Source of the DNA: Macrostomum lignano
Lineage: Eukaryota
Assembly (NCBI GenBank): GCA_002269645.1
Contig: NIVC01000035.1
Location: forward strand, 620,001 to 684,000
Reading direction: 5' to 3'
Length of the DNA: 64,000 nt
The notes beneath the pieces were generated by a model, which was not told where the DNA came from, searched no databases, and saw only the letters and a program-made list of their open reading frames with translations. Position 1 is the stretch's first letter, and each line of letters begins with the position of its first letter. The translations under genes were made by a program, and so were the position numbers. Shown in pieces: positions 4,279 to 63,467 of this stretch.

Positions 4279-7146
4279 GTCAGTCAGACGAAATGTGGCA
4301 ATTATCTAGTAATTAATTACGATAACAAATCATTTTTCTTTTCGACATGCTTCATTCCTTATTTATCTCGCCCACCTGCTTTGAAACAGATTTAATTAAT
4401 TAGCATTTTTGTGCCTTCCAACTCAATTTTTTGCCAGCGATTTCGATCAGCACAGAAAGGCCATCGGAAATGGGCCTGCCAATTAGTGTTAGGAGTGTTG
4501 ATGGTGAATCTGCCGTCAGCCAGAGTGCTAGCACTGCCGCTAGCTCTCCAACTAGCACCACCCTTAGCCCTCCAGCTAGCACTACCATTAGCTCTCCAGC
4601 TAGCACCGCCCTTAGCCCTCCAGCTAGCACTACCCTTAGCCCTCCAGCTAGCACTACCCTTAGCCCTCCAGCTAGCACCACCCTTAGCTCTCCAGCTAGC
4701 ACCACCCTTAGCCCTCCAGCTAGCACCACCCTTAGCTCTCCAGCTAGCACTACCGTTAGCCCTCCAGCTAGCACTACCCTTAGCCCTCCAGCTAGCACCA
4801 CCCTTAGCTCTCCAGCTAGCACCGCCCTTAGCCCTCCAGCTAGCACTACCCTTAGCCCTCCTGCTAGCACTACCGTTAGCCCTCCAGCTAGCACTCCCAT
4901 TAGCCCTCCAGCTAGCACTACCGTTAGCCCTCCAGCTAGCAGTACCGTTAGCCCTCCAGCTAGCACTACCGTTAGCCCTCCAGCTAGCACTACCGTTAGC
5001 CCTCCAGCTAGCACTACCCTTAGCCCTCCAGCTAGCACTACCGTTAGCCCTCCAGCTAGCACTACCGTTAGCCCTCCAGCTAGCACTCCCATTAGCCTTC
5101 CAGCTAGCACTACCGTTAGCCCTCCAGCTAGCACCACCCTTAGCCCTCCAGCTAGCACTACCCTTAGCCCTCCAGCTAGCACTGCAGGCGCAGATTCAAA
5201 GCCACATCAGCAGGAGAGTGCATCAACATCAGTAATCACTGAGCACCCAGGAGCCTACGAGGCTTCAATGTCTCAGGCTCACAATGGTAAAGCTATCGTT
5301 TTTGTTAACACAATAAATTATCCTAGTTGCAATGCATCACAATAACTATTTAGTTAATTGGTTTGACATTAAAGCAAACTCATTATGATTGAAAGCTAAT
5401 TTGATAGTATATTATATAAGTATTTCATTATTTAAGTTTGGTTCATTGAAGTCCAGCGTATTCCATGATCGCAAACCAAATTTTTTATACCCAAATTATA
5501 TTTTTTCTGACTGTTTATCGAAGACTATTAGCATGATAACAAAGGAATTTTAACCCTGTAAATGCAATAATTTTTAGTTAAGATTGTGACGGTGATTGAG
5601 ATTGAAATTATTTATGAACTTTTGACTTTTTTAGACAATTTTTGCTGTCCCACCGTAATTTTAATGAATTATAAATTCACTACCTGCTTCTCTACTTGTG
5701 AGTAGTCACTGGGGTTTTGTTTTCAGTGTCCTTAAGCGACCTTGATACCCCTACGTGTCCTTAAGTTACCCCGATACCCCTGTGTCCTTAAGTGACCCCG
5801 ATACCTCTACGTGTCCTTTAGCGACCCCGATAACCCCTACGTGTCCTTAAGTTACCCCGATACCCCTGTGTCCTTAAGTGCCCCCGATACCCCTGTGTCC
5901 TTAAGTTACCCCGATACCCCTGTGTCCTTAAGTTACCCCGATACCCCTGTGTCCTTAAGTGCCCACGATACCCCTGTGTCCTTAAGTGACTCCGATTCCT
6001 CTACGTGTCCTTAAGTGCCCACGATACCCCTGTGTCCTTAAGTGACTCCGATTCCTCTACGTGTCCTTAAGTGACCCCGATACCCCATGTGTCCTTAAGT
6101 TACCCCGATACCCCTGTGTCCTTAAGTGACCCCGATACCTCTACGTGTCCTTTAGCGACCCCGATAACCCCTACGTGTCCTTAAGTTACCCCGATACCCC
6201 TGTGTCCTTAAGTGCCCCCGATACCCCTGTGTCCTTAAGTTACCCCGATACCCCTGTGTCCTTAAGTTACCCCGATACCCCTGTGTCCTTAAGTGCCCAC
6301 GATACCCCTGTGTCCTTAAGTGACTCCGATTCCTCTACGTGTCCTTAAGTGCCCACGATACCCCTGTGTCCTTAAGTGACTCCGATTCCTCTACGTGTCC
6401 TTAAGTGACCCCGATACCCCATGTGTCCTTAAGTTACCCCGATACCCCTGTGTCCTTAAGTGACCCGATACCCCTGTGTCCTTAAGTGCCCCCGATACCT
6501 CTACGTGTCCTTAAGCGACCCCGATACCCCTGTGTCCTTAAGTGCCCCGATACCCCTGTGTCCTTAAGTTACCCCGATACCCCTGTGTCCTTAAGTGCCC
6601 CCGATACCCCTGTGTCCTTAAGTGACCCCGATACCCCTGTGTCCTTGAGTGCTCCCGAATGTCCATACGTGTCTTTAGATGACCCTTATAACCCTCCGTG
6701 CCCTAAAGTGACCCGGCCAATCTATTTAACCCCCGTACACGCTGCAGTATTTCTGTGCATCTTGTCAGTGTTGGCAACTAGCCTACTTTCAGTAGTATAA
6801 TGCAGAAAAATGACGTTTACTTTTTCATCATTTAACTTATTCAACAGACGAAGAATCCGCCTCGAAACAATCTCAGTCTGGCGCGACTCGCCCAACACCG
6901 TCAGCTGTGGCGGCTGCGGGCAAGTCGCCATCCGCTGTCGGCGTGGCGGCCGCTGAGGACGTCAGCGTCAGCTTCATGCCAGCGGGTCGCACAGTGGGTG
7001 GCCTGGCAGCCGCTCTGGTATTCGGCTGCGCCTTCACCTTGGTGGTGGCCGCGCTCTCCTGTCGGGTGCTGTGCGAAGCTTGGAGCCGGCGGCACTACAG
7101 CAAACTGCGTTACCTTGACAACGGGGGCGCAAGTAGCGGGTTCTAA
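514..7146 (+). CDS. MANSC-domain, mucin-stalk type I membrane protein (MANSC1-like); exons 514-751, 3696-3878, 4438-5286, 6848-7146 (522 aa)
   Basis: Signal peptide [20 protein letters not shown]. Joined exons 1-2 give C-x3-CC-x3-CELAIYE...NCFLLSC...CVF, matching the MANSC Cys pattern. Exon 3 is an S/T/P-rich PPASTTLS repeat. Exon 4 has a TM helix then [13 protein letters not shown], resembling the MANSC1 tail RKRYSRLDYLING. All three introns are GT-AG, phase 1; total 1569 nt; AATAAA overlaps the stop (7145-7150). Confidence 0.85.
790..1225. repeat. Degenerate ~21-bp tandem repeat (GAGAGGCGCCAAATTGAGTRT), MANSC intron 1
   Basis: Direct inspection. Confidence 0.85.
1760..3556. repeat. 51-bp minisatellite (~35 copies) containing the palindrome CTGAAGCTTCAG, MANSC intron 1
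   Basis: 17-aa periodicity in the ORF track; direct inspection. Confidence 0.95.
3917..4280. repeat. (GACA)n microsatellite, MANSC intron 2
   Basis: Direct inspection. Confidence 0.97.
4530..5180 (+). repeat. Coding 24-bp VNTR (PPASTTL/VS) forming the mucin stalk
   Basis: In frame within exon 3, no frameshifts. Confidence 0.9.
5727..6700. repeat. 27/29-bp minisatellite (GTGTCCTTAAGTGACCCCGATACCCCT) with a 334-bp higher-order duplication, MANSC intron 3
   Basis: Identical ORFs at 5811 and 6145. Confidence 0.93.
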
Positions 7147-10980: not shown

Positions 10981-11222
10981 GGCTGAATATCCGCTAATCA
11001 CAGAGCCGCTATTCTAAAGGCAGCCCGCAAAAGAAATATGTCCGTGCAGCTTTTGGCAAACTGTCTTGCACAATCAACTGACATCTGCAGCAGCCATGTC
11101 AGCCAATCCAACAGTGAGAGCCAGTTGTATAAATATTAACTCAAATAAGAATGGCCAGTTTAAGGCACAAGCGACCGCACGTGATTACAAAACTGGTTTC
11201 TGAAGAAATTTCAACCCCGTTC

Positions 11223-11969
11223 GTTGCCTATGGCAACCAAAGCTAGCCTGCCAGATCCGGACTCGTTTCTGCAACACCGTAGAAAGCAAAGCAAGTCTTC
11301 AACAGCAGCAACAACAAACCTTTCGAAGCAAAATCAGCAGCAGATCACTGCAGAGTCCGCCAGCTCCGATGCGCAGTCGGTGCAGATCAAACAGATGCCG
11401 CCAGGTGACAATATTCGGCAGGCGTTTCCCGATCCGGAGCAGCTGATGCTGGCAAGGCGGAGCGAAAAAGATGAAGCCAATAAAAGACAGACTCCTGTTC
11501 CTACCACTACCGCTGTAGGTGGCACAGCAGGTGTTACAAAGACTGATAGCAATAATGTTACCGCTTTAAAAGAGGAGAGGGAGCGTCTGAAGCGAGAGCT
11601 GCTGAGTCAGGTTACGTCATCGTCTGCCAGTAGGCCAGCAGTTGCCATAGAAACTAACAACGGTATTTCATCTAGACCTCCGGTTGTCATGGAGACGAAG
11701 ACGTCGTCAGCAACTCCTCAATCGCCGGTTGTCATGGAGACGAAGACATCGTCAAAAACGCCTCAATCGCCGGTTGTCATGGAGACCAAGACATCGTCAA
11801 CAACGCCTCGATCGCCGGTTGTCATGGAGACGACAACTTCATCAACCCCACCGAGACTTCCAGCTGCCTTGGAGACTAAATCATCAGCTTCATCGCGACC
11901 TTTGGTTTCTATGGTAACGGAAAATCGATCAACAAAACCGATCGCGCGACCTATCGTTACCATGGAAAC
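11223..11969. promoter_or_regulatory. Cluster of RFX X-box-like palindromes: 11223-11237, 11641-11654, 11683-11696, 11728-11741, 11773-11786, 11818-11831, 11863-11876 (degenerate), 11905-11918, 11956-11969
   Basis: GTTGCCTATGGCAAC, GTTGCCATAGAAAC, 4x GTTGTCATGGAGAC, GCTGCCTTGGAGAC, GTTTCTATGGTAAC, GTTACCATGGAAAC. Motif match only. Confidence 0.55.
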
Positions 11970-14618
11970 GCAGCAGTCGACAGCGGCGTCAACAATGCCG
12001 CTGCCTAGCGCCTCCAGTCTGGTAACTCGCGCTACGACAAAGACGACAACTTTTGCTGAATCGGTGCCGAGTCGATCCAAGAACTCACCTGCTGCCGACT
12101 CTGCCCAATCCCGCCGTCCTGTATTTCGCTCTACTAAGTCGCAATTTCATGAGAGCGACGCGCCCGGACAAGATCGACAGAGCAGGTCGCTTCGTCGGCG
12201 TCAAGACGGTGGTGCTGGTGGAGGCGAGTCTGCAAAAGAAGAGCAAAAAGAGTCGGGCGGGGAAATGGTGAGTTTGAGGCGATTCAGGAAGTGAGAATTT
12301 ATGGCGAATGGGGTGTCTAGGGGTGGAACTTTGACGTGTCTAGAAATGGGACTTTGACGTGTCTAGGGATGAGACTTTGAAGTTTCTAGGGGTGAGACTT
12401 TGACGTGTCTAGAAGTGGGACTTTGACGTGTCTAGAAATGGGACTTTGACGTGTCTAGGGCTGAGACTTTGAAGTTTCTAGGGGTGAGACTTTGACGTGT
12501 CTAGAAGTGGGACTTTGACGTGTCTAGAAATGGGACTTTGACGTGTCTAGGGCTGAGACTTTGAAGTTTCTAGGGGTGAGACTTTGACGTGTCTAGAAGT
12601 GGGACTTTGACGTGTCTAGGGCTGAGACTTTGAAGTTTCTAGGGGTGAGACTTTGACGTGTCTAGAAGTGGGACTTTGACGTGTCTAGAAATGGGACTTT
12701 GACGTGTCTAGGGCTGAGACTTTGAAGTTTCTAGGGGTGAGACTTTGACGTGTCTAGAAGTGGAACTTTGACGTGTCTAGAAATGGGACTTTGACGTGTC
12801 TAGGGCTGAGACTTTGAAGTGTCTAGGGGTGAGACTTTGACATGTCTAGGGGTGAGACTTTGACATATCTAGGGGTGAGACTTTGTTATTTCTAGGGGTT
12901 AGACTTTGACATGTCTAGGAGTGAGACTTTGACGTGAGAGCGAAGTTTCAATAGAAGAAACTTTGCGACCTTCAGGGGGGAGAATTCGAAGCTGCAAGTA
13001 CCATGCACATAGGTTCCGTTTCGAAGGAAGGCAGATATTGCAAGTTTACAATATTTACACTGCCGTACTATCAGCAGAAGAAGCCACGCAGACTGGCCAA
13101 GCTGATTGGCTACTGGCAAAAAGCAGCAATCGTGATGCTGACTCAGCCCCATGCCTCCCAGAGCAGCGTGCTACCTGGAGAGGGAGGGGAGACTCAGTTG
13201 ACTAAAATTGGTAGAGAGGGAAGAGGGAGGGAGAGGCGAGAAAGACGAGAGAGGTGAGCTACGGAAACGAGACAGCCGTACCCTGCTTCTAAAAGAAGCC
13301 CAAGTTGCAGAGCTAATTTTTGCTCTGCTGCCTGGACATCAGCAGCTCCATATTGATTGGCTTTTGTCGGGGCGGGGGAGGCGAGGGGAGGTTAAAGAGA
13401 GCAGGGAATGCAAAGCTCATAGAAGTATGGGAGAAAATGGGATGAGTTAGGAATGAGGTTTCTAGCATCTAGCAGTTCAGAGCCGAGTGTGAGGCAAGCG
13501 TGAGTTTCACTTTTGAATTTTCTCATTAAAATATTCGCTTCATCAGGCTGAGTGAGGGATTTGTTCTGGATACACACTGACCGTATCTAACCCGTATCTA
13601 ACCCATATCTAACCCAAGTCTAACTCATATCTAACCCATATCTAACCGTCTAACCCATGTCTAACTCATATCTAACCCATATCTAACCCATATCTAATCA
13701 ATATTTAACCCATATCTAACCCATATCTAACCCATGTCTAACTAATATCTAACCCATATCTAATCAATATCTAACCCATATCTAATCAATATCTAACCAA
13801 TATTTAACCGATATCTAACCAATGTCTAACTCAAATCTAATCCCTATCTAATTAATATCTCACCCATATCTAATCCATGTTTAACTCATGTCTAACCCAT
13901 ATCTTATCAATAGCTAACCCAATATCTAATCCATGTCTAACTCATGATGTCAAACCCATATCTAACCCATGTCTAACTCATATCTAATCCATATCTAACC
14001 CTTATCTACCCCATATCTAGTCCATGTCTCTATCCAGTATCTAACCCATATCTATTCCATATCTAATCCGCATGAACAATGCCCAATCAAGCAAACCCTG
14101 AAAATTAACCAATCTAATTAACATAATTTATGCAGGCCGAATCCCCAAATTCGGACGGAACAGACGAGCTGCTTCGAGTCGGCTGGAGCCAGCAGGGTCC
14201 GCACCGGAGGCGCTACCTTCGACAGCAGCACCGACAGCGAAGAAGCAACTCGGCCAGAGCGGTCAACTCCTTTTCCGACAACGAAGAGGACTCAGATTTA
14301 TCTGACAGAGCTGTCGCTGCAGCCGCCTCGGAGCCTTGCCTGCCATTGAAGTCTTCTGCTCCTAGTAGAAGACTAGGCCTTGGAGATCTGAAGCTACCGC
14401 CGCCTCCTCCGCCGCCACCGCTGCCGCCTGTCGCTCCGAGGATGTTCGCGCCGCCGCCCCCACCGCCGCCGCCTTCGAACTTGGCCGCTGCCGTGCAGTG
14501 GGTTCGAGAGCTGCGAGATCGAGAGAAGGAGCGAGAAAGGGAACGCGAGAGGGAGAGAGAGATGCGAGAGTCGGCAGAGGACGAGTTGAGAAGCGACTGC
14601 CAACAGCTCACTAATGCT
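11230..14618 (+). CDS. N-terminal exons (11230-12267, 14136-14618) of an unidentified S/T/P-rich, Pro-rich and charged protein
   Basis: 346-codon non-satellite ORF ends at donor ATG|GTGAGT (phase 0). Acceptor TATGCAG|GCC at 14136 (phase 0). Exon ends GCT|GTGAGT at 14618 (phase 0). True start uncertain: an acceptor CTGCCAG near 11252 is also possible. Confidence 0.65.
12320..12935. repeat. ~20-bp minisatellite (GACTTTGACGTGTCTAG core) with higher-order pattern, intronic
   Basis: Direct inspection. Confidence 0.93.
13585..14070. repeat. 11-bp minisatellite (TCTAACCCATA), intronic
   Basis: Direct inspection. Confidence 0.9.
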
Positions 14619-15895: not shown

Positions 15896-17788
15896 ATGCC
15901 TGTTGTTCAAAGCAGTCTTCTTCACTTGTTTGCTATGATTCTGCTGCAAGCGATATTATTGGTATTGCTATTTGCACCTGGCCTCTGCCATTCCGATGAC
16001 TCATTCGAATCCGACAGTTCACCAGACCCGGACGTCACCATTGCTGTGCTTGTCCGGAACAAGGCCTTTGCTCTGCCCTACTCGCTGGCTGGAATCGAGC
16101 GGCAGAACTACAACTCAAGCCGGCTGTCCATGCTATTCTTCGTTGATCACAGCAGAGACAGGAGTCTGCAACTGCTGCACACCTGGCAGCGAGCAAATCT
16201 GCAACGGTACGCGCGAATTGAAATCCGAGCAAGCGAGTATCCACTAAAATTCGATGGCGAAGAAGAGACTCAAGGCTTGGACTGGACCGAGGAGCGCTTT
16301 CGTCACGTGCTGAGACTTAGACAGCTAGCCTTGGAGTCGGCTCGAGTCTACGGTTCAAAGTTTGTGTTTTACCTGGACGCCGACGTGTTGATCACTTATC
16401 CCGAAACGCTTCGTCACCTGACCAGCAGGGACTTGAGCTTGCTGGCTCCCCTGCTCAACTGCAGCACGGATGCGAGCTTTGGTGCCAACTTCTGGGGCGA
16501 CATTGACCGCGAGACTGGCTATTACCTTCGATCTGACACCTACCTTGACATCCAGAGGCGAAGGCGCGTCGGCATCTTCCCGGTGGCCGTTGTTCATTCG
16601 GCATTTTTGCTGTCGTTGCAGAACGATGACAGCACTGGCTCCGGATTTAAGTTCGATCCGATGCCCAGCAACTACCCGATCGAGTGGCCCATTGACGACT
16701 TGCCTTTGATGCACTGGGCTGCCGCGGCTGCGGGCATCCAGCCTGTGCTGGACAACAGTCTGCAGTTTGGCGTCTACGCCACCTTCGACGACAGGCGCTT
16801 GCTGTCTGACAAGAGTCTGCCAGTTCTAGACCTGGAGGCTGGAGCGTTCAAGCACGCCCTGATGGAGTTTCACTATCACCGTGCCGGCCTCGAGTCCTGG
16901 CAACCCGTCGCTTCGTTGGCCAATTACGCTGCTCCATCAAGGCCTCCGAGGAAGCTGGGCTTCGACCTGATATTCGTCATCAATTTGTCGAGGCGGCCAG
17001 ATCGTCTGGAAAGAATGCGGTACGCACTGACACTGCTGGGACTCGACTGGAAGCATCTGGAAGCTGTCGACGGCCGCCGGTTGAACTCGAGCTGGCTGCA
17101 GCGAAACGGGATCAAATCCTTGGACGGGTACGCGGACCCCTTCCACGGTCGGGGACTCACCATGGGCGAAGTCGGCTGCTTCCTCAGCCATCACGCTGTC
17201 TGGCAGGCTCTGGCAAACGATCCGACGCTAAATCGAGTTCTCGTCCTGGAAGACGACGTCCGGTTCGGTCCGAACTTTGAGGAGCGCCTCTTGGCAACTG
17301 TGAGGGAGGCAGATCGCCTGCAGTCGGACTGGGAACTGCTGTACCTCGGACGGAAGATCATGTACTCAGAGGACGAGAAGGCGGTACCTGGCTCGGAGTT
17401 TCTCACATATCCTGCCTACACCTACTGGACCCTCGGCTACGCCCTCACTAAGCGAGGTGCCGAGAAACTCGTCGCTCAAAAACCATTGAGCCGATTGATT
17501 GCAGTTGACGAATACTTGCCGGTGATGTTCGACCGGCACCCGAACGGCAAGTGGAAAGCGGCGTTCCAGCCGAGGGATCTGGTAGCGATCAGCGCGGCGC
17601 CACTGCTGCTGCAGCCGAACTACTACATCGGGATGGAGCACTACGTCAGCGACACGGAAGGCTCATCCGTGCTAACTGGAGCCGACGGAGGAGTCTGCCG
17701 AGACGGGGCCGATTGCTCCACCGTCGAGGGCAAGTCAACCGACGCCAGCAGCCGTCCAGCGGATCGATATTCGAAAATTCGAAATTAA
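15896..17788 (+). CDS. COLGALT1: Procollagen galactosyltransferase (COLGALT1/CERCAM family, GT25), intronless, 630 aa
   Basis: Signal peptide MPVVQSSLLHLFAMILLQAILLVLL. N-domain motifs IAVLVRNK, DH, YLDADVL, NFWG, VHS. C-terminal GT25 motifs FVINLSRRPDR, AVDG, GEVGCFLSH, LEDDVRF, LLYLGRK, YWTLGY, VDEYLP. The in-frame upstream extension to 15677 is probably UTR. Confidence 0.93.
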   Translation: MPVVQSSLLHLFAMILLQAILLVLLFAPGLCHSDDSFESDSSPDPDVTIAVLVRNKAFALPYSLAGIERQNYNSSRLSMLFFVDHSRDRSLQLLHTWQRANLQRYARIEIRASEYPLKFDGEEETQGLDWTEERFRHVLRLRQLALESARVYGSKFVFYLDADVLITYPETLRHLTSRDLSLLAPLLNCSTDASFGANFWGDIDRETGYYLRSDTYLDIQRRRRVGIFPVAVVHSAFLLSLQNDDSTGSGFKFDPMPSNYPIEWPIDDLPLMHWAAAAAGIQPVLDNSLQFGVYATFDDRRLLSDKSLPVLDLEAGAFKHALMEFHYHRAGLESWQPVASLANYAAPSRPPRKLGFDLIFVINLSRRPDRLERMRYALTLLGLDWKHLEAVDGRRLNSSWLQRNGIKSLDGYADPFHGRGLTMGEVGCFLSHHAVWQALANDPTLNRVLVLEDDVRFGPNFEERLLATVREADRLQSDWELLYLGRKIMYSEDEKAVPGSEFLTYPAYTYWTLGYALTKRGAEKLVAQKPLSRLIAVDEYLPVMFDRHPNGKWKAAFQPRDLVAISAAPLLLQPNYYIGMEHYVSDTEGSSVLTGADGGVCRDGADCSTVEGKSTDASSRPADRYSKIRN

Positions 17789-20450: not shown

Positions 20451-21892
20451 CTCCGCTCTCGCCAGCTCGAACTGGACAGACTCTCAAGCCAACTGGAACC
20501 GCTTCATCGTCAGAATCTCCAGATGCGAGCTCAGCTGCTGGCGGCCAGGCAACCGAATTCCGGACTCAACAGGGACGACGGCGAGGATTCGGCGATGATG
20601 ACGAACGGCGACAGTTGGCGTCGGCAGCGGCCGGCCAACGTCGGCGGCTTGGAACGGCGAATCGCCGGGCTGGAGACGCAGCTGATGCGGATGCAGGAGG
20701 AGAACGCGGATCTGGCAGCCCGGCTGGCCAGCGCCAGTGCGGCCGCCGAGGATGGAGCCCGAAGGTTCGGGATGCTGGGGAGCTGCGTGTGTGGCTTGCT
20801 TGGGATTTGGGATTGGTAGATGGGGAGATGGGGATTCCGCCCGCTGTTTAATTGATCTCAGTTGGGTGAGATGGGATTTCAGTTGGGTAAGGTGGGATCT
20901 CAGTTGGGTTAGATGGGATCTCAGTTGGGTAAGGTGGGATCTCAGTTGGGTTAGATGGGATCTCAGTTGGGTAAGGTGGGATCTCAGTTGGGTTAGATGG
21001 GATCTCAGTTGGGTAAGGTGGGATCTCAGTTGGGTGAGATGGGATTTCAGTTGGGTAAGGTGGGATCTCAGTTGGGTTAGATGGGATCTCAGTTGGGTGA
21101 GATGGGATCTCAGTTGGGTAAGATTGGATTTCAGTTGGGTGAGATGGGATTTCAGTTGGGTAAGATGAAATTTCAGTTGGGTGAGATGGGATCTCATTTG
21201 GAAGAGATAGATCTCAGTTAGGTGAGATGGGATCTCAGTTGGCTGAGATGGGATCTCAGTTGGCTGAGATGGGATCTCAGTTGGCTGAGATGGGATCTCA
21301 GTTGGCTGAGATGGGATCTCAGTTGGCTGAGATGGGATCTCAGTTGGCTGAGATGGGATCTCAGATGAGGAGATGTGGGATTTTAAGGTCTTTCGGGAAT
21401 TAAAAAATGGGATATCTAGACTCGAAAAAATGATCCCCTTTTCAGAGCTCAGCAGGACAGCGCCCAGCTCATGGAGCAAGAGGCTCTCAAACAGCAGCTT
21501 CGCCGCCTGGAAGCCGAAGTCCAGCGGCTCCAACGCTGCAACTCCAACGCACCGGCGCTGGCGGCGCCACCGTCAGCGCCAGCAGCCGTCAGCTCGGTGG
21601 CCAGGAACGCCGAGCATCGGGCAGTCATCGACGCCGCCGAGGCCGCCTTAAAACAACTGGATGAGCCGCGCGTTCTGGACGATCCCGCCAACGACTTCGA
21701 TGGCGGAGGCGACGTCTGGAAGTCGAGCGGCACCTTGAGCGCCGGTGGCTACGTGCTGGAGGAGCGGCTGCCACCAAACAGTCGCGGCAATTTGCTGTTC
21801 AAACGAGTCGCACCGTCGTCTACAAGCAGCTCACCGATTGTCGGCGAAACGTCGACAAAAAGTCAGCAGCAGTGGTGGCAGCCGCAGCAACA

Positions 21893-21932
<40 letters not shown>

Positions 21933-23669
21933 CGGCAGTGGTGGCAGCAACAGAAGCCACAGCAAGACGAACTTCTCCTGGTCGTGTCGCCCAGGAAGGA
22001 GAAGCTGCCAGCGGCGTCTCCACCTCCGCCAACTCCGCCACCGCCGCCGCCACCGCCGCCGCCTCAGCGCCAGGAAGACCGGGAGATCTCAGAGCGAGTT
22101 CGAAACTTCTTAGCCCGCCTGCCCGCGCTCAGCAACCCGGCCAGTGGCGCTGGTCGGCAGCAGCGAGGTCGGTCTGTTTTTGACGATACTGACGGCGCGG
22201 AGAAGTCGGCGTCGAGCCCGGCGTTTGCGTCGGAGAAGACGCGTCAAGGCGTCAGTTTCCAGGGGGAATTCGACACCGGTTGCGACACTGAGGAAGAGGG
22301 GGGCTACGAGGATTTTGATGGGCCGATATCGCAGCAGCAGCAGCAGAGTTCGTCAAGTCGCGGAGGCCTCCTAGCGCGTCTTCGTGCTCAGGCTGCGATG
22401 AGGCTGCAGCAGGAAGCTGCGGTGATGAAGCTGCCAGCATCGCCAACTGCGGCAGCTGATTCCACCGCAGAAATTGAAGCCGATTTCGCTCCGGCGGAAA
22501 CTTTGGCTCAGGTGAGGCAGAGATTTCGCGAGTCGTCCGCCGAGGCGCTGTACGGTGGCGGCGGCGGCGGCGGCTCTGCGGGCTCCGGGGGCCGGGCGGT
22601 GCCGCCACTCGATCTTGACTTCGTGACCGGGTGAGCTGACGGCTTTATTGACAGAGAGCATTGAAAGTTCAAATAGCTGAAATTCAAATTTATAGCTAGT
22701 TGGAAACTTTCTTGAAGTAAATAGTACAAACTTTATTTGCAATTTAATGTTGATTTTTTAGATTAAGTATGTACTGATAATAAATTAGTCATTTATTGAA
22801 AAATATTTGCAAACAATCACATGCTAGCTTTAGTTAAAAAATATATACGAAATAAGATAATAGAAATAAATATATAATTTAATTAATTCTGTTTTTTTAA
22901 AAATCAAAAAATAAATAAAATTACTGATAATTCAAACACTCATTAGTTAATGTTGAAGTTAAACTTGAAAGAAACTATATTTGAGGAAGCATTGTGTAAA
23001 CAAAGTGAAAAATTTACAATTAAAAATAAATTCTTTCTTCAATATATTAGTGGCAATTGGATTGCTTGATTTAGAACGTAAATAATGAAATATTTCAATT
23101 TTTTGTTATAACCAGTAGTTGAACTTTTGTTTTTTCATTTATTTGAATTCTACTTAATATATATTTAGTAAATAAAATTACTTCATTTTATTGTTAATTA
23201 AATTTATTTAAAATTTAAATTAAATTTATTAATTAAATTTTATTAAAAATTATTAAAATATATTTTTAATATATATATATTAATAATAATAAATGAAAAA
23301 TATTTAAAAGAAAAAAAGAAAAAAACTAATAAATATATAAAAATTATTTTTTAAAATTGTTAAAATTAATTAAATTAATTATACTTAATTTAAACCTTTT
23401 TGTTATAGTTTCACTAAGATAATTTAACTTCGAATGCAAGGCATGATACACTTAGATTTATAATTTGAAATAATCTTAAATTTCAAACAAACAAAAAAGT
23501 TACGAAGCATTTTGTCTTCAATTTCAGCCAACAACCACAGAAGCAGCAGTCGCAGCAGCAGCAACAGCAGGACAATCTGTCTCCCAGTGCCCGTCGCTAT
23601 GCGGACCAGCTCGTTCACAAGTACCTGAGCACTCTTTCCGACACCCAAGCGGCATCCACCGCGCACTGA
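20451..23669 (+). CDS. Coiled-coil, poly-Q/poly-P protein exons 20451-20764, 21446-22630, 23528-23669; probably the C-terminal part of the 11230-14618 gene (about 1053 aa if joined)
   Basis: Heptad-like segments (LERRIAGLETQLMRMQEENADL; LKQQLRRLEAEVQRLQ). Phase-2 junctions AG|GTTCGG..TTCAG|A and GG|GTGAGC..TTTCAG|C both keep frame. Ends ...ARRYADQLVHKYLSTLSDTQAASTAH*. No family recognised. Confidence 0.7.
20855..21365. repeat. 21-bp minisatellite (GATGGGATCTCAGTTGGGTTA), intronic
   Basis: 7-aa periodicity. Confidence 0.95.
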
Positions 23670-24041: not shown

Positions 24042-24055
24042 GTTGCTATGGTAAC
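24042..24055. promoter_or_regulatory. RFX X-box
   Basis: GTTGCTATGGTAAC, a full match to GTHNYY-AT-RRNAAC. Confidence 0.5.
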
Positions 24056-31756: not shown

Positions 31757-32009
31757 ATCGAATGCAAAAATAATTGTTGCATAATACTGTAAGAACCCAG
31801 ACTACTTGAAAACTACTTGAGACTACTTGACTTCTGTAAGATAAACAATGCAATTACCCATGCTACTGAATATTTTGTTGGTAGATAAGCCAGTCCGACA
31901 TGAACCTTTATTGTACATTTTCGCCTAAGTGACAAGGTAAAAGAATATTACTCTCGTATTTCTATTCCAATGTGTACTTTAAAGTATTAACTAGTTCGAG
32001 TTTCATAGT

Positions 32010-34665
32010 TAGCAATCCACTCTAATCCTTCATCCATATTGTGTCTCAATAGATTAGCAATCCTCTCTAATCCTTCATCCATATTGTGTCTCAGTAGATT
32101 AGCAATCCATTCTAATCCTACATCCATATTGTGTCTCAATAGATTAGCAATCCTCTCTAATCCTTCATCCATATTGTGTCTCAATAGATAAGCAATCCTC
32201 TCTAATCCTTCATCCATATTGTGTCTCAATAGATTAGCAATCCACTCTAATCCTTCATCCATATTGTGTCTCAATAGATTAGCAATCCTCTCTAGTCCTT
32301 CATCCATATTGTGTGTCAATAGATTAGCAATCCATTCGTGTGTCAATAGATTAGCAATCCATTCTAATCCTTCATCCATATTGTGTCTCAGTAGATTAGC
32401 AATCCATTCTAATCCTTCATCTATATTTTGCCTCAATATATTAGCAATCCATTCTAATCCTTCATCCATATTGTGTCTCAGTAGATTAGCAATCCATTCT
32501 AATCCTTCATCCATATTTTGCCTCAATATATTAGCAATCCTCTCTAATCCTTCATCCATATTGTGTCTCAATAGATAAGCAATCCTCTCTAATCCTTTAT
32601 CCATATTGTGTCGCAGTAGATTAGCAATCCACTCTAATCCTTTATCCATATTGTGTCTCAGTAGATAAGCAATCCACTCTAATCCTTCATCCATATTGTG
32701 TCTCAGTAGATTAACAATCCTCTCTAATCCTTCATCCATATTGTGCCTCAATAGATTAACAATCCTCTCTAATCCTTTATCCATATTGTGTCGCAGTAGA
32801 TTAGCAATCCATTCTAATCCTTTATCCATATTGTGTCGCAGTAGATTAGCAATCCATTCTAATCCTTCATCCATATTGTGTCTCAATAGATTAGCAATCC
32901 ATTCTAATCCTTCATCCATATTGTGTCTCAATAGATTAGCAATCCACTCTAATCCTTCATCCATATTGTGTCTCAGTAGATTAGCAATCCATTCTAATCC
33001 TTCATCAATATTGTGTCTCAGTAGATTAGCAATCCATTCTAATCCTTCATCCATATTGTGTCTCAGTAGATTAACAATCGATTCTAATCCTTCATCCATA
33101 TTGTGTCTCAATAGATTAGCAATCCACTCTAATCCTTCATCCATATTGTGTGTCAGTAGATTAGCAATCCATTCTAATCCTTCATCCATATTGTGTGTCA
33201 ATATATTAGCAATCCATTCTAATCCTTCATCCATATTGTGTCTCAGTAGATTAGCAATCCACTCTAATCCTTCATCCATATTGTGTCTCAATAGATTAGC
33301 AATCCACTCTAATCCTTCATCCATATTGTGTCTCAGTAGATTAGCAATCCATTCTAATCCTTCATCCATATTGTGTCTCAATAGATTAGCAATCCATTCT
33401 AATCCTTCATCCATTGTGTCTCAGTAGATTAGCAATCCTCTCTAATCCTTCATCCATATTGTGTCTCAATAGATTAGCAATCCACTCTAATCCTTCATCC
33501 ATATTGTGTCTCAATAGATTAGCAATCCACTCTAATCCCTCATCCATATTGTGTCTCAGTAGATTAGCAATCCATTCTAATCCTTCATCCATATTGTGTC
33601 TCAGTAGATTAGCAATCCTCTCTAATCCTTCATCCATATTGTGTCTCAATAGATTAGCAATCCTCTCTAATCCTACATCCATATTGTGTCTCAGTAGATT
33701 AGCAATCCATTCTAATCCTTAATCCATATTGTGTCTCAGTAGATTAGCAATCCATTCTAATCCTTCATCCATATTGTGTCTCAATAGATTAGCAATCCAT
33801 TCTAATCCTTAATCCATATTGTGTCTCAGTAGATTAGCAATCCACTCTAATCTTTCATCCATATTGTGTCTCAATAGATTAGCAATCCATTCTAATCCTT
33901 CATCCATATTGTGAATCAATAGATTAGCAATCCACTCTAATCCTTCATCCATATTGTGGCTCAATAGATTAGCAATCCACTCTAATCCTTCATCCATATT
34001 GTGTCTCAATAGATTAGCAATCCACTCTAATCCTTCATCCATATTGTGTCTCAATAGATTAGCAATCCTCTCTAATCCTTCATCCATATTGTGTCGCAGT
34101 AGATTAGCAATCCATTCTAATCCTTCATCCATATTGTGTCTCAATAGATTAGCAATCCACTCTAATCCTTCATCCATATTGTGTCTCAATAGATTAGCAA
34201 TCCACTCTAATCCTTCATCCATATTGTGTCTCAATAGATTAGCAATCCACTCTAATCCTTCATCCATATTGTGTCTCAATAGATTAGCAATCCACTCTAA
34301 TCCTTCATCCATATTGTGAATCAATCGATTAGCAATCCACTCTAATCTTTCATCCATATTGTGTCTCAATAGATTAGCAATCCATTCTAATCCTTAATCC
34401 ATATTGTGTCTCAGTAGATTAGCAATCCACTCTAATCTTTCATCCATATTGTGTCTCAATAGATTAGCAATCCATTCTAATCCTTCATCCATATTGTGTC
34501 TCAATAGATTAGCAGTCCTCTCTAATCCTTCATCCATATTGTGTCTCAATAGATTAGCAGTCCTCTCTAGTCCTTCATCTATATTGTGTCTCAATAGATT
34601 AGCAATCCTCTCTAATGCTTCATCCATATTGTGTCTGAATAGATTAGCAATCCATTCTAATCCCT
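32010..34665. repeat. 45-bp satellite array 1 (~59 copies)
   Basis: Unit TAGATTAGCAATCCAYTCTAATCCTTCATCCATATTGTGTCTCAR; 15-aa periodicity. Confidence 0.97.
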
Positions 34666-35958: not shown

Positions 35959-38900
35959 ATGAGCACCCTGACGATGGAGAAGGCTACAGCTTCTTCTGGA
36001 AATTCAACAGCAACAGCGGCCGCAGCAGCAGCAGCAGCAGCAGCAGCCGCCTCTTCAATCTGGAGGCCGCAAACTGCTCAGTCGTCGGCTTCGCTGATGT
36101 CGCAGCTGCAGCATCCTCTGCCGCCCCAGCCACCGCCGCAGCTGCCGCCACCGCAGCCGCCGCAGCCGCAGTTGTCGCCGGCTCTGCATGCCGCGGCTCT
36201 GATGACGGCCTTCGGTCTGCATCCGCCGCCGCCGCCGCCGCCACAATATCCCCCTGCCAGCCGCTCCATGCTGCACCAGATGCACCCTGGCGGCAGGTAT
36301 CCGCCATTGTCTATGGCTGAGGTGCCCCGCCTGCCGCCTCAATTCCAGCCTCATCAGCAGCCTCATCTGCATCCGGGTCAGCTTCAGCCAAGGCTGCATC
36401 GATCTGTCGCAGCAGCAGCAAGCGGCAGCGGTGCAGAAGCGCTGCCAATGGTGAACCAACTGTTCAGGAGAGGCACAGTCCTGTCAATCTGGGGCGGCAG
36501 GTTCAAGCGGGTTGAAGAGCTCACCCTGCAGGATTTCGAACTGACGGCAATGGCTAACGCTGTGCCTGCCGCGGCCTCTTCTGCTTCCGCTGTTGCAGCA
36601 ATCGAATCTCAAGCCAGCGGCTTCAGCCTGATTCACTGTCGGCTTGTTCAGGTTGAAGACAGCAGGACTGACGGCACCTCCACACTGCAGCTGGTGTCGA
36701 TCGGTGCGGAGCGGAAGCAGGTGCGTTCTGAGCTGGGCTTGATTTTCGATTTTGAATTTCTGAACTTCAGATTGTGCCATAGACATAATAGGGATAAGGG
36801 CGTCCCTATAAGACAGGGGCGCCCACCGAGAGAGAGGGGCGCCATCCAAGAGACAGGGGCGCCCACCAAGAGACAGGGGCGCCATCCAAGATACAGAGAC
36901 GCCATCCAAGAGACAGGGGCGCCCACCAAGAGACAGGGGCGCCATCCAAGATACAGGGGCGCCATCCAAGAGACAGGGGCGCCATCCAGAAGACAGGGGC
37001 GCCATCCAAGATACAGGGACGCCATCCAAGAGACAGGGGCGCCATCCAAGAGACAGGGGCGCCCACCAAGAGACAGGGGCGCCCACCAAGAGACAGGGGC
37101 GCCCACCAAGAGACAGGGGCGCCAACCAAGAGACAGGGACGCCATCCAAGAGACAGGGGCGCCCACCGAGAGAGAGGGGCGCCATCCAAGAGACAGGGGC
37201 GCCATCCAAGAGACAGGGACGCCATCCAAGAGACAGGGGCGCCCACCAAGAGACAGGGGCGCCATCCAAGAGACAGGGACGCCATCCAAGAGACAGGGGC
37301 GCCATCCAAGAGACAGGGGCGCCATCCAAGAGACATGAGCGCCATCCAAGACACAGGGGCGCCATCCAAGAGACAGGGGTGCCAACCAAGAGACAGGGGC
37401 GCCAACCAAGAGACAGGGGCGCCAAAAATAGGTCGCCAAGGAGCAACAGGCGCAACTCTGGCGCCCCAAACGCCGCGCAAGGATCACTTCAGCACCACAA
37501 GACAAGCCTGCTTCGCTGAGAACAAACGCGAACTCCCTGCTAGAAAAACTCGTCAGTTTTAATTTAATTTAAGCAAAACTAAACTATCGGAAGAGCCCAT
37601 GTAGATTTTTTATATTCGCACGAGCATAAAGTTTCAAGGCTTCAAGAACAGTTACTTAAAATTCTGTATAAGTCAATTTGACAGCTCTAGCTAGTATATA
37701 CTTAATTGTCTCCCACACTTTTCTACTTGTCACTACTGGAGTGGCCTCGTTGGTACCGTAATAAATTCTGGCCGTGAGACTCTTTAGTTTATGGTCCATT
37801 TAACTTTACAAAATGCAGCAAGAATGGCTTTCGTTTGTCTGTGCGCTAAAGCTTATTTGTCTATGGCTTTATATTTGGCGACTTGTCTGTCTATGGTTCT
37901 TTTGATTGAAGATCTGCTGCCTGAATGTAATTGCCGTGAATCTTTGAACCATAGACATCTTGGACCATAGACATCTCGGACCATAGACATCTCGAACCAT
38001 AGACATCTCGGACCATATACATCTCGGACTATAGACATCTCGAACTATAGACATCTCGGACCATAGACATCTCGGATCATAAACATCTCGGACCATAGAC
38101 ATCTTGGACCATATACATCTCGGACCATAGACATCTCGGACTATAGACATCTCGGACCATAGACATCTCGGACTATAGACATCTCGGACTATAGAAATCT
38201 CGAACCATAGACATCTCGGACCATAGACATCTCGGACCATAGGCATCTCTTTCCTGTGTGTCTTTGTAAAAAGTGTCCCTCCATATTTGGAAAATAGATG
38301 CAGCAGCAATCAATGATGGTCAGTTAACAATCGCGCCTTAACCCTAACCCCAACCAAGCGAGATAGAAACAAGGGGTAGGAGCAAGCTTGTGAAAGGGAG
38401 AGGAGTGAGCAGGGAGAGTGACAGGCAGTTATGAGTGAAATCAGCCGCTTGAAAATGCCGACCCAAATGCCCATATAGTGGTGTCTGAATACCGCTTAGC
38501 GACCCGACCTAAACTGACTATTCCCTTAAACCCCTCCCCCACTTGAGCGCGTTAAAACCACTCCTCACTATTGCTACTCCACGATAAACTGAGGCGGAGT
38601 CGTCACTGATCCTCAAGTCCCCCCTCTGCTCCCCACTGTCCACCCCCCCCACAAACACTGACTGACCCGGCCATATGCTAATGCCAAGGACTTCTAATCC
38701 TGCCGCTAAAACTCCCCAGTGTAAGTCAATTCCGTCTGGACTAGAACCAGTTAATTCAAGTTAATATCGGCGGTTTCTATAGCATCCCTCTCTGACCAAA
38801 TTTACAGACAATCTAATGACCAAATTTACAGACAATCTAATGACCAAATTTACAGACAATCTAATGACCAAATTTACAGACAATCTAATGACCAAATTTA

Positions 38901-44564: not shown

Positions 44565-45728
44565 GGCTCAATAGATTAGCAATCCACTCTAATCCTTCAT
44601 CCATCTTGTGTCTCAGTAGATTAGCAATCCACTCTAATCCTTCATCCATATTGTGTCTCAGTAGATTAGCAATCCACTCTAATCCTTCATCTATATTGTG
44701 TCTCAATAGATTAGCAATCCACTCTAATCCTTCATCCATATTGTGTCTCAATAGATTAGCAATCCATTCTAATCCTTCATCCATATTGTGTCTCAATAGA
44801 TTAGCAATCCATTCTAATCCTTCATCCATATTGTGTCTCAATTGTAGATTAGCAATCCTCTCTAATCCTTCATCCATATTGTGTCTCAGTAGATTAGCAA
44901 TCCATTCTAATCCTTCATCCATATTGTGTCTCAGTAGATTAGCAATCCATTCTAATCCTTCATCCATATTGTGTCTCAGTAGATTAGCAATCCATTCTAA
45001 TCCTTCATCCATCTTGTGACTCAATCAATTAGCAATTCATTCTAATCCTTCATCCATATTGTGTCTCAGTAGATTAGCAATCCATTCTAATCCTTCATCC
45101 ATCTTGTGACTCAATCAATTAGCAATTCATTCTAATCCTTCATCCATATTGTGTCTCAGTAGATTAGCAATCCATTCTAATCCTTCATCCATATTGTGTC
45201 TCAGTAGATTAGCAATCCACTCTAATCCTTCATCTATATTGTGTCTCAATAGATTAGCAATCCACTCTAATCCTTCATCCATATTGTGTCTCAATAGATT
45301 AGCAATCCATTCTAATCCTTCATCCATATTGTGTCTCAATTGTAGATTAGCAATCCTCTCTAATCCTTCATCCATATTGTGTCTCAGTAGATTAGCAATC
45401 CATTCTAATCCTTCATCCATATTGTGTCTCAATAGATTAGCAATCCACTCTAATCCTTCATCCATATTGTGTCTCAATAGATTAGCAATCCATTCTAATC
45501 CTTCATCTATATTGTGTCTCAATAGATTAGCAATCCACTCTAATCCTTCATCCATATTGTGTCTCAGTAGATTAGCAATCCATTCTAATCCTTCATCCAT
45601 ATTGTGTCTCAGTAGATTAGCAATCCATTCTAATCCTTCATCCATATTGTGTCTCAGTAGATTAGCAATCCATTCTAATCCTTCATCCATCTTGTGACTC
45701 AATCAATTAGCAATTCATTCTAATCCTT
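44565..45728. repeat. 45-bp satellite array 2, same family and orientation as 32010-34665
   Basis: Same unit; flanks differ from array 1. Confidence 0.97.
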
Positions 45729-46244
45729 ATTCATAGAGGTTATATGGCTTCTATTTTTATGACTATAAACTAATCGCCCCTCTCAGAATATCAATCAGGT
45801 TGATAGCGAGTATCAGGCAGCTCAGTTATAGAAAGTGAATTTGTTATGCCAGATCAAAGGCACTTTTCCGGCTCAGCAACCCTAATCAATCAGCTTTCCT
45901 ACCTCGCTCTATTTCGACTCGATTGGCTCTGGAAACTTAGCAGTACTCAGTCTTAAAGCCTGGAGAACCGGCTCTAGGGGACAGAATTCAATCAGTCAGT
46001 GTCTTGTTTTTTATTGCTTTGCAGAGCTGAGCAGATTTAGACTCAACTGGGCCAAGCCGTCTTCTTTTTAGTTTGTTTGTAAATTGAAACGATAAGTTCG
46101 GGATCAGTGCATGAGGATTGTCAGTTTTTTATAAAAAGGCATGGGCTCAATATAGTCGGGCAGGCATCCCCGCGCCTCCTACTTGTTGTGCGTGGGAACC
46201 TGAGAAGCATCTTGTGTCACTTTGCACTGATGGTTTTTATTTCC

Positions 46245-50666: not shown

Positions 50667-51039
50667 CTCTCCAGATTTAATGCTTAGTCTGTCTTTCTAC
50701 GGTCCAGGTCTCCCTATAGGGCTGATATTTTCTCATCAATTTCGCAGAGTTCGCAGATTGCCCTTGTGCCTGTATGAGTCTCCATGAGTACTGGGTACAA
50801 CTAAAGCTTTTTGCTCCCATTTTCGTCTTCATTTCATTCAAACTTTGCTCAAATTTCCTTGTTGGTTTTTTCTTCAGCGCGACGGTCAAAATCCATGCTC
50901 AACTGCCTCGTCCATTTCCCACACTGGGGCCTGTTCTCACAGCAAATATTGCCCTTCTGCATTCAGCAATCGGCATTCAGATTAAGTATAATTTCAAGCA
51001 GTATAATTTATAAACATTTATAAACTCTACTGCAGTTTA

Positions 51040-52515: not shown

Positions 52516-52945
52516 CAAATGATTGACAAATGCTCAACTGAAAAACTTACCAAAATGAAGAACTTTACTCACAGATCAATGAGATCAATTTTAACTTCTC
52601 ACAATTGAATGGATTTGAAATTTGTCTATACAGCAACTGTCTCAATGCTTACAGGTTTTTCTTTAAAACTCAATCAATTGTTTAGCAAGCTACACAAAGG
52701 CTCAAAACTGTACTCAAGTTGCGAGTTGATTTAGATTGAGCCAACCTTATACTAAGCTATTGAGTTGGCTCAAATTGTACAGCCTTCCCAGCTTTTAGAA
52801 TTACTTTCAACCCCAAGTCCACTGGGTAGGCTGGCTTGGTCAGTCAATAATTCTCTCTTCCCCACCCTGAAAGTCCATCTCTGACCAATTCTATAAATAT
52901 AATCCACCGCTGCTAATAGGTGAGCGTGCTCAACTATGGACTCGC

Positions 52946-52959
52946 GTTGCCATGGAGAC
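52946..52959. promoter_or_regulatory. RFX X-box in a short unique, promoter-like segment
   Basis: GTTGCCATGGAGAC, with CCAAT (52885) and TATAAA (52892) nearby. Confidence 0.55.
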
Positions 52960-63022: not shown

Positions 63023-63467
63023 TTCCAACGTAGTTGGTAAAACTTTTCTTGATTGGAATTTTGTCTGACAATTCCCTTCTAGCTTTTCAAAAGCTTGGAC
63101 AAATGCAAAGCAACAGTTTAATAAGGTGGACTGGGCCTCTGCTTCTGGGGGAACTCACTGGCCAATGAGAATGCCTGTGCCCGTATCTGGGCCTCCCTGC
63201 TCATTTATAGTGGCGCTTCCAACTCCCTCCCTCTGTTCTACATCTCTCAGCTCTCTGCCCATGCGCCCCCCACTGTATTTCTATAGTAACATTTAATTTT
63301 CCAAATGAAATGCTTCAGCATTGAGTGCGCAAGGCAAAAAAACCAGCGCACTAAACTGCAATTAGTAGAATGGTAGATTACGATAAAAAAGATGGGACTC
63401 AGGATTCTGTTCCTCCAAAGCTTCCCCAATGTTTGTCCATCGCTTCCACATGCTAGACGGGAAGTGC

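What the first reader, a model, noticed from the sequence alone, without database searches (positions are those of the whole stretch)
11223..11969. Coding exon that doubles as a homotypic array of RFX X-boxes (V-x-M-E-T peptide repeats)
Seen: eight 14-bp palindrome-like sites spaced 42-51 bp apart (11641-11969), all in the same codon register (VAIET, 4x VVMET, AALET, VSMVT, VTMET), plus GTTGCC-TAT-GGCAAC straddling the putative ATG at 11230. Known: RFX factors, the master regulators of ciliogenesis, bind GTHNYY-AT-RRNAAC. Three sites (11641, 11905, 11956) match strictly and four more match the relaxed RRNRAC form. A uniform-base estimate gives about 0.4 strict matches per 64 kb (both strands) and about 0.002 in 330 bp. 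The four VVMET copies are tandem duplicates and not independent, but the strict matches differ in sequence and encoded residues while keeping the DNA consensus. Inference: the exon may be under dual (protein plus enhancer) selection, forming a tunable RFX enhancer expanded through a 45-bp coding repeat.
Basis: partly seen in the sequence, partly recalled or inferred. Interest (0 to 1): 0.7.

Follow-up and report, generated by a model that had tools for sequence, protein, structure and literature searches.

The report
Coding peptide repeat spelling RFX X-boxes
A repeated 15-amino-acid stretch in the first exon of an orphan flatworm-like gene is written in codons that also read as seven textbook binding sites for the cilia regulator RFX, but all seven descend from one duplicated unit, so a selected enhancer role is possible and not shown.

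Summary
Seven of the eight sites match the strict X-box consensus, because the four VVMET copies match on the minus strand. Three site types are letter-identical to validated C. elegans X-boxes (xbx-5, dyf-5, xbx-1). GTTGCC-TAT-GGCAAC at the start codon is the best RFX half-site pair in the window.

The exon is the first of a four-exon, 1007-codon gene with no detectable homologues, in a flatworm-like genome. About 46% of the window is minisatellite.

All eight sites occupy the same codons of one degenerate tandem peptide repeat (R-P-x-V-x-M-E-T-x-x-S-S), so they count as one ancestral event that was amplified.

The peptide alone fixes most of the 14 positions. Conservation also extends beyond the X-box, with Arg and Ser kept through synonymous codon changes. 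Tests on synonymous sites are only weakly suggestive (p about 0.05).

X-box-like words are independently enriched elsewhere in the window, one upstream of an axonemal-type LRR gene, so RFX regulation here is plausible.

My best reading is a coding minisatellite whose X-box cluster is a by-product (about 0.55). A selected dual-use RFX enhancer remains open (about 0.2). No orthologues were found to decide between them.

The parts
11103..11135 (+). [quoted passage not shown]
   Evidence: Sequence reading; positions. No transcript data, so the promoter role is inferred.
11223..11237 (.). 15-bp perfect palindromic X-box GTTGCC-TAT-GGCAAC overlapping the ATG at 11230
   Evidence: It has the best half-site PWM score in the window at any spacer (18.8 bits); 0.007 sites are expected with permuted half-site PWMs. 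15-bp X-boxes are documented in C. elegans (nph-1, F25B4.2; PMC3245922).
11230..12267 (+). Exon 1 (346 codons), with donor GTGAGT at 12268
   Evidence: ORF; sequence; in-frame four-exon model.
11632..12000 (+). Eight degenerate tandem units of 14-18 codons, peptide R-P-x-V-x-M-E-T-x-x-S-S; units 2-5 are recent 45-bp copies
   Evidence: TRF; codon alignment; unit HMM finds all eight and nothing else convincing in the six frames.
11641..11654 (.). X-box site 1, GTTGCCATAGAAAC (VAIET); strict on both strands; 20.0 bits
11683..11696 (-). X-box site 2, GTCTCCATGACAAC on the minus strand (VVMET); identical to the validated xbx-5 X-box; 20.1 bits
11728..11741 (-). X-box site 3, same sequence as site 2
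11773..11786 (-). X-box site 4, same sequence as site 2
11818..11831 (-). X-box site 5, same sequence as site 2
11863..11876 (.). Decayed unit GCTGCCTTGGAGAC (AALET); fails both consensus forms; 12.2 bits
11905..11918 (.). X-box site 7, GTTTCTATGGTAAC (VSMVT); its minus strand is identical to the validated dyf-5 X-box; 17.9 bits
11956..11969 (.). X-box site 8, GTTACCATGGAAAC (VTMET); its minus strand is identical to the validated xbx-1 X-box; 20.7 bits
14136..14618 (+). Exon 2 (161 codons; two poly-Pro tracts and the start of a coiled coil)
20451..20764 (+). Exon 3 (coiled coil)
21446..22634 (+). Exon 4 (coiled coil, poly-Gln, poly-Pro; stop codon at 22632-22634)
21834..21863 (+). Isolated degenerate copy of the peptide unit (P-I-V-G-E-T-S-T-K-S) that does not form an X-box
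   Evidence: Regex hit at residue 742; DNA read.

Best explanation
The stretch is a protein-coding minisatellite. It lies in the disordered, Ser/Thr/Pro-rich N-terminal part of a lineage-restricted 1007-residue protein that also has coiled-coil and poly-proline regions. One 14-17-residue unit (R-P-x-V-x-M-E-T-x-x-S-S) was duplicated in tandem, in frame, in a genome where almost half the local DNA is minisatellite.

The conserved peptide core V-x-M-E-T is written GTT-NYC-ATG-GAR-AC. These codons fix 9-10 of the 14 X-box positions. The ancestral unit happened to carry X-box-compatible choices at the few free positions. Duplication then copied that single match eight times, and selection on the peptide core kept it in seven.

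Shown: the sites, their shared register, their common origin, the in-frame gene model, and peptide conservation beyond the X-box. Inferred: that selection acts on the peptide and not on RFX binding. The sites are good enough that RFX may well occupy them, but that would be a side-effect and not the reason they exist.
For: - All eight sites occupy the same codons of homologous units. TRF finds a 45-bp unit. Unit lengths of 42/45/45/45/45/42/51 bp preserve the frame.
- The four-exon model is 3024 nt with one terminal stop.
- 46.5% of the window is high-scoring tandem array, so amplification of any short word is commonplace here.
- Conservation extends outside the X-box with synonymous turnover: Arg at -3 is AGG/AGA/CGA, Pro at -2 is CCA/CCT, and Ser-Ser uses TCA/TCT/TCG.
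- An isolated P-I-V-G-E-T-S-T-K-S copy in exon 4 keeps the peptide flavour without an X-box.
- VVMET and VTMET alone give a strict X-box with probability about 0.22-0.25 under random synonymous codons.
- Substitutions among units fall mainly at codon 2 (A/V/S/T), which both models tolerate.
- One unit (11863) has lost the X-box but kept a conservative peptide, AALET.
Against: - With fully randomised synonymous codons, all four independent lineages would be strict matches only about 1e-4 of the time (product of the values).
- Third codon positions inside the motif are unusually constant: T at position 3 in 8/8 units and a pyrimidine at position 6 in 8/8. Among units 2-5, 0 of 3 in-motif synonymous sites vary against 8 of 11 in the flanks (Fisher p about 0.055).
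- The radical E-to-V change in unit 7 falls on an N position and leaves a perfect dyf-5-type X-box.
- The same gene carries the window's best RFX half-site pair at its start codon.
- X-box words are enriched elsewhere in the window.
- No function is known for the peptide motif.
Confidence: 0.55

Rival explanations
1. Dual-use exon. The seven exonic X-boxes, together with the start-codon X-box, are bound by RFX in ciliated cells. They act as a selected intragenic, promoter-proximal enhancer, or as a repressor as reported for exon-1 X-boxes of human MAP1A. Repeat copy number sets the dose.
For: - Site quality is at or above the median of validated X-boxes, and three site types are letter-identical to xbx-5, dyf-5 and xbx-1.
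- The window's top 15-bp palindromic X-box lies at 11223, 95 bp downstream of a TATA box of the same gene.
- Four distinct non-array sites reach 16 bits or more, against 0.08 expected. One lies upstream of an axonemal-type LRR gene.
- Constancy of in-motif third positions is weakly suggestive.
- In planarians an Rfx factor is linked to cilia modules whose promoters are enriched in its motif (PMC12660999).
- Exonic enhancers are an accepted class (PMC13216554, PMC4207465).
- Exon-1 X-boxes bound by RFX1 are reported for MAP1A (cited in PMC3245922).
Against: - The sites are not independent, and the peptide constraint explains most positions.
- The synonymous-site signals rest on 3-4 sites (p about 0.05) and on a region chosen because it matches.
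- Validated nematode X-boxes all lie within 500 bp upstream of the ATG, in 1-3 copies (PMC3245922).
- In Drosophila the mere presence of an X-box did not predict RFX dependence without cross-species conservation (PMC2375033).
- The gene has no homologues and no sign of a ciliary role.
Confidence: 0.2
2. Incidental occupancy. RFX binds the array because the sequence is competent and lies in open, transcribed chromatin next to a genuine promoter X-box. The binding is not under selection, and any effect on expression is neutral or slight.
For: The site-quality evidence is the same as for the dual-use reading. The array's origin is fully explained by duplication. Nothing requires DNA-level selection once codon 2 is treated realistically.
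Against: There are no binding data. This reading cannot be told apart from the other two using sequence alone.
Confidence: 0.2
3. The ORF is not translated, and the array is a non-coding regulatory or neutral minisatellite in a 5' region.
For: Tandem arrays in this window often create long spurious ORFs. There is no homologue or Pfam domain.
Against: - Only about a third of the 346-codon exon is repeat.
- The exon joins three further exons through GT/AG sites with compatible phases, giving 1007 codons and a single terminal stop.
- All unit lengths are multiples of three.
- Arg and Ser positions show synonymous turnover.
Confidence: 0.03

Closest known systems
Promoter X-boxes of RFX/DAF-19 target genes (C. 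elegans xbx, bbs, dyf and osm genes; Drosophila dRFX targets)
   Same: They are 14-bp imperfect palindromes of the form GTHNYY-AT-RRNAAC. The exon sites are letter-identical to the xbx-5, dyf-5 and xbx-1 X-boxes. The 15-bp start-codon site resembles the nph-1 type.
   Different: Validated sites lie 60-770 bp upstream of the ATG, nearly all within 300 bp, in 1-3 copies. Here seven lie 410-740 bp inside the coding sequence, in one codon register of a peptide repeat. Neither binding nor RFX dependence has been tested.
Exonic enhancers (eExons) and dual-use codons
   Same: A coding exon carries transcription-factor motifs close to its own promoter (PMC4745165, PMC4207465, PMC13216554).
   Different: Known cases are defined by reporter activity or chromatin data and usually combine several motif types. 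Here there is only sequence, and the motif array is homotypic and produced by a coding tandem repeat.
Multiple X-box arrangements: human MAP1A exon 1 (RFX1 repression), yeast Crt1 at RNR genes, C. elegans F25B4.2
   Same: More than one X-box per gene, including sites within a first exon, with combined or opposing effects (PMC3245922).
   Different: Those have two or three sites that do not encode a peptide repeat. Seven or eight tandem copies have not been described in the papers read.
Coding minisatellites (in-frame tandem peptide repeats in disordered Ser/Thr/Pro-rich regions)
   Same: Head-to-tail units with lengths that are multiples of three, young near-identical central copies and older diverged edge copies, and a conserved short core with variable spacers.
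   Different: The conserved core happens to be a high-information palindromic transcription-factor site. The peptide motif matches no known family.

Membership tests
RFX X-box binding site | Match to the 14-bp consensus GTHNYYATRRNAAC on either strand | tested here: met
   7 of 8 exon sites match. The 11863 unit fails both the strict and relaxed forms.
RFX X-box binding site | Score within the range of experimentally validated X-boxes | tested here: met
   With a PWM from 30 validated sites, the exon sites score 17.9-20.7 bits against a validated median of 18.2 and 10th percentile of 16.0. Three site types are identical to validated sites.
RFX X-box binding site | [quoted passage not shown] | tested here: not met
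   The exon sites lie 411-739 bp downstream of the ATG, inside the CDS. Only the 11223 site is at the 5' end, where it overlaps the ATG.
RFX X-box binding site | Conservation of the site in orthologous genes | not testable with these tools
   No orthologue was found by a word-indexed search, an exhaustive HMMER search (three low-complexity hits only), a search with exons 2-4 or a metagenome scan.
RFX X-box binding site | RFX binding, and RFX- or X-box-dependent expression | not testable with these tools
   Needs EMSA, DAP-seq, ChIP, RNAi or a reporter assay.
Exonic enhancer / dual-use coding sequence | The element lies in a translated exon | tested here: met
   Four exons, 3024 nt, GT/AG junctions and a single terminal stop. 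Unit lengths are multiples of three. There is no transcript evidence.
Exonic enhancer / dual-use coding sequence | Excess constraint on synonymous sites inside the motif | tested here: inconclusive
   - Position 3 is T in 8/8 units and position 6 is a pyrimidine in 8/8.
- Among units 2-5, 0/3 in-motif against 8/11 flanking third positions vary (p about 0.055).
- The units share ancestry: units 7 and 8 share CGA CCT...ACG.
- The region was also picked because it matches the consensus.
Exonic enhancer / dual-use coding sequence | Enhancer activity | not testable with these tools
   Needs a reporter assay or chromatin data.
Coding minisatellite / tandem peptide repeat | Head-to-tail homologous units | tested here: met
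   TRF finds a 45-bp unit with 3.4 copies at 92% identity, and a 90-bp period. Eight units align and are all recovered by a unit HMM.
Coding minisatellite / tandem peptide repeat | Reading frame preserved through all units | tested here: met
   Unit lengths are 42/45/45/45/45/42/51 bp, all in frame 0 of the ORF.
Coding minisatellite / tandem peptide repeat | Residues conserved through synonymous codon change (selection at the peptide level) | tested here: met
   Arg -3 is AGG/AGA/CGA, Pro -2 is CCA/CCT, Thr +5 is ACT/ACG/ACC, and Ser-Ser is TCA/TCT/TCG. The sample is small.

The most novel reading that the evidence does not exclude
A coding minisatellite acts as a copy-number-tunable homotypic RFX enhancer. 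Each added 45-bp peptide unit adds one canonical X-box about 0.4-0.7 kb downstream of a promoter that already carries a palindromic X-box. Repeat expansion would then change protein length and RFX-driven transcription of the gene together, with both the codons and the binding sites under selection.
Probability: 0.2. Interest if true: 0.7.

Novelty: new member of a known kind. Interest (0 to 1): 0.4.

Why it matters
If the array is only a by-product, it is a cautionary example. In repeat-rich genomes one chance or inherited motif match can be amplified into an apparently overwhelming homotypic cluster, so motif-cluster statistics must collapse tandem copies.

If RFX really uses these sites, this would be a clear natural case of a coding tandem repeat doubling as a dosage-tunable transcription-factor array. 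It would link repeat-length variation to both protein structure and transcription.

It would also be readily testable, because the peptide and the DNA motif can be separated by synonymous recoding.

Independently of the exon, the enrichment of nematode-type X-boxes near genes in this window suggests that the RFX/X-box code can be read directly in this flatworm-like genome. One of those genes is of an axonemal LRR type.

Tried and rejected
Searches for relatives and annotation that found nothing useful:
- Exon-1 protein against the 5.8-billion-protein index: no hit.
- Exhaustive HMMER over 1.84 billion representatives: three hits at E>1e-4. All are unrelated S-P-A-V-L-N-E-type low-complexity repeats.
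- Exons 2-4 with homopolymers masked: no hit.
- Metagenome contig scan: 145 pattern matches, none confirmed.
- Pfam on each exon and on exons 2-4: nothing.
- PDB sequence search: only a marginal poly-Pro match to leiomodin.
- Rfam on the whole window: no RNA family.

Ideas considered and dropped:
- The peptide core as a calcineurin PxIxIT-type docking motif. Only unit 1 (PAVAIE) would fit the usual pattern as I recall it. The others have Pro at position 2 or Met at position 5. This was not tested.
- The X-box core as a by-product of a Kozak context (RCCATGG). This is relevant to the start-codon-associated sites at 11223 and 52946 but not to internal Met codons.
- A substitution-compatibility test: 8 of 10 inferred changes keep the consensus, against about 38% expected for synonymous or conservative single changes. 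I rejected it as evidence because 4 of the 8 lie in codon 2, where any A/V/S/T exchange is compatible under both models, and because the region was selected for matching.
- Weak unit-HMM hits at 50765-50794(-) and 52946(+). Both are explained by an adjacent (GACA)n array and a short ATG-GAG-AC word, so they are not paralogues.

A Macrostomum-like genome is only a guess, based on composition and repeat content.

Full report
**Setting**

The window is eukaryotic, about 45% G+C, and very rich in minisatellites. Arrays with a TRF score of 300 or more cover 46.5% of it. A single-exon GLT25/COLGALT-like ORF (15896-17788, +) has its best hits at 42-45% identity. The named hits at that level are trematode and cestode proteins, ahead of molluscs and vertebrates at 36-40%. 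The source is therefore probably a platyhelminth, or a close relative, that is absent from the protein databases. I do not name a species. Repeat content of this kind is reported for Macrostomum lignano (PMC5730564), but that is only a resemblance.

**Checking the observation**

- GTHNYYATRRNAAC gives 13 strand-matches in the window against 0.24 expected.
Seven of eight sites are therefore strict, and only the AALET unit at 11863 fails.
- To avoid relying on memory, I took the 30 validated 14-bp C. elegans X-boxes from Table 1 of PMC3245922 and built a PWM.
- The exon sites score 17.9-20.7 bits, against a validated median of 18.2. Eight window sites exceed the median, against 0.01 in shuffles and 0.01-0.02 with column-permuted PWMs applied to the real sequence.
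- The VVMET sites are letter-identical to the xbx-5 X-box, 11905 to dyf-5 and 11956 to xbx-1.
- GTTGCC-TAT-GGCAAC at 11223-11237 is present. It has the best RFX half-site score in the window at any spacer (18.8 bits; 0.007 expected). It lies 95 bp downstream of TATAAATA (11128) and CCAAT (11103).

**What the stretch is**

- Exon 1 runs from ATG 11230 to 12267, with donor GTGAGT.
- It joins 14136-14618, 20451-20764 and 21446-22634 through GT/AG sites with compatible phases. This gives 3024 nt, 1007 codons and one terminal stop.
- The GLT25-like gene sits inside intron 2 on the same strand.
- The protein has a Ser/Thr/Pro-rich N-terminus, two poly-Pro tracts, coiled coil and poly-Gln.
- It has no Pfam domain and no detectable homologue in any search available to me.

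**The repeat**

- Aligned by codon, the eight sites occupy the same five codons of eight homologous units of 14-18 codons: R-P-x-V-x-M-E-T-x-x-S-S....
- Units 2-5 are young 45-bp copies (TRF 92% identity). Units 1, 6, 7 and 8 are older.
- The cluster is therefore one ancestral word amplified by tandem duplication.
- The appropriate chance figure is that of one unit carrying such a word. That is still small, but it must be weighed against a genome-wide, many-motif search.

**Peptide or DNA constraint?**

The best-conserved 14-column block of the aligned units coincides exactly with the X-box. It also coincides exactly with V-x-M-E-T minus the free third base of Thr, so this does not discriminate between the two.

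For the peptide:
- Conservation continues outside the X-box with synonymous turnover: Arg -3 is AGG/AGA/CGA, Pro -2 is CCA/CCT, and Ser-Ser uses several codons.
- The decayed unit keeps a conservative AALET.
- An isolated P-I-V-G-E-T-S-T-K-S in exon 4 lacks an X-box.
- VVMET or VTMET alone yields a strict X-box about a quarter of the time with random synonymous codons.

For the DNA:
- With fully randomised synonymous codons, all four independent lineages would match only about 1e-4 of the time.
- Position 3 is T in 8/8 units and position 6 is a pyrimidine in 8/8.
- Among the young copies, 0/3 in-motif against 8/11 flanking third positions vary (p about 0.055).
- The radical E-to-V change in unit 7 falls on an N position.

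However, the units are not saturated at synonymous sites (units 7 and 8 share CGA CCT ... ACG). Four of the eight consensus-compatible substitutions lie in codon 2, where A/V/S/T exchanges are compatible under both models. The region was also picked because it matches. I regard the DNA-level signal as suggestive only.

**Context that raises the prior for RFX**

Outside the array the window holds four distinct sites of 16 bits or more, against 0.08 expected:
- 52946 scores 22.1 bits and is identical to the bbs-5 X-box. It lies 46 bp from a TATAAATA.
- 24042 scores 20.2 bits, in an AT-rich 3' intergenic stretch.
- 7109 scores 16.7 bits, inside a coding exon.
- 63882 scores 16.1 bits. It is about 850 bp upstream of the first coding exon of a minus-strand LRR gene. 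One LRR exon of that gene matches chains from axonemal cryo-EM structures (LRRC34, DRC5 and RSP15 types, best E = 5e-27).

In planarians an Rfx factor is linked to cilia gene modules whose promoters are enriched in its motif (PMC12660999). The X-box therefore appears to be a real regulatory word here, and the repeat gene may be an ordinary RFX target through its 5' site.

**Comparison with known systems**

- Validated nematode X-boxes lie upstream of the ATG in one to three copies.
- Multiple X-boxes can combine activating and repressing effects, and RFX1 is reported to act through two X-boxes in MAP1A exon 1 (PMC3245922).
- In Drosophila, the presence of an X-box alone did not predict RFX dependence. 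Cross-species conservation did (PMC2375033).
- Exonic enhancers are an accepted class (PMC4745165, PMC4207465, PMC13216554).
- The exon sites pass the sequence criteria for X-boxes and fail the positional one. Conservation and binding could not be tested.

**Verdict**

- The functional half (dual selection, tunable enhancer) is neither supported nor excluded.
- Most likely (0.55), this is a coding minisatellite whose conserved peptide core happens to spell an X-box that duplication multiplied.
- A selected dual-use enhancer (0.2) and unselected incidental RFX occupancy (0.2) remain open. A non-coding reading is unlikely (0.03).

Noticed in passing
window 52892-52959: GTTGCCATGGAGAC is the top-scoring X-box in the window (22.1 bits). 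Its minus strand is identical to the validated bbs-5 X-box. It lies 46 bp from a TATAAATA and contains a Kozak-like GCCATGG. No clear downstream coding exon was identified. It lies between a minus-strand AAA-ATPase exon (49053-50066) and the 3' end of the LRR gene.
   Followed up: partly
window 63882-63895 and 57617-63028 (-): GCTACCATAGCAAC (16.1 bits) lies about 850 bp upstream of the first coding exon of a multi-exon RNI-type LRR gene. One LRR exon of that gene best matches chains from axonemal cryo-EM entries (LRRC34, DRC5 and RSP15 types, E down to 5e-27). This is a candidate conventional RFX target.
   Followed up: partly
window 24042-24055: GTTGCTATGGTAAC matches the strict X-box on both strands (20.2 bits). 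It directly follows a (TA)n run in an AT-rich stretch between the 3' end of the repeat gene and a minus-strand gene. It is not at an obvious promoter.
   Followed up: no
window 15896-17788 (+): A single-exon GLT25/COLGALT-like glycosyltransferase gene (630 aa, Pfam PF01755) is nested in intron 2 of the repeat gene on the same strand. Its best database identity is only 42-45%, mostly to flatworm proteins.
   Followed up: partly
whole window: 46.5% of the 64 kb is covered by about 40 distinct high-scoring tandem arrays (units 4-54 bp), filling introns and intergenic DNA. The same 45-bp family recurs at 32005-34663 and 44567-45735. These arrays create many long spurious ORFs on both strands.
   Followed up: partly
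window 21834-21863 (+): Exon 4 of the same gene holds one isolated, degenerate copy of the repeat peptide (P-I-V-G-E-T-S-T-K-S; CCG ATT GTC GGC GAA ACG ...). It is similar to the array units at both DNA and peptide level but does not form an X-box.
   Followed up: partly
window 35959-36900 (+): An ORF rich in poly-Ala, poly-Pro and poly-Gln has a weak AXH (ataxin-1/HBP1) domain hit (E = 0.004, below the Pfam cut-off). It then runs into a 20-bp tandem array.
   Followed up: no
window 7109-7122: An X-box-like GTTACCTTGACAAC (16.7 bits) lies inside what reads as the last coding exon of a single-pass membrane protein (…[19 protein letters not shown]), in a different codon register from the array sites. 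It is probably chance.
   Followed up: no
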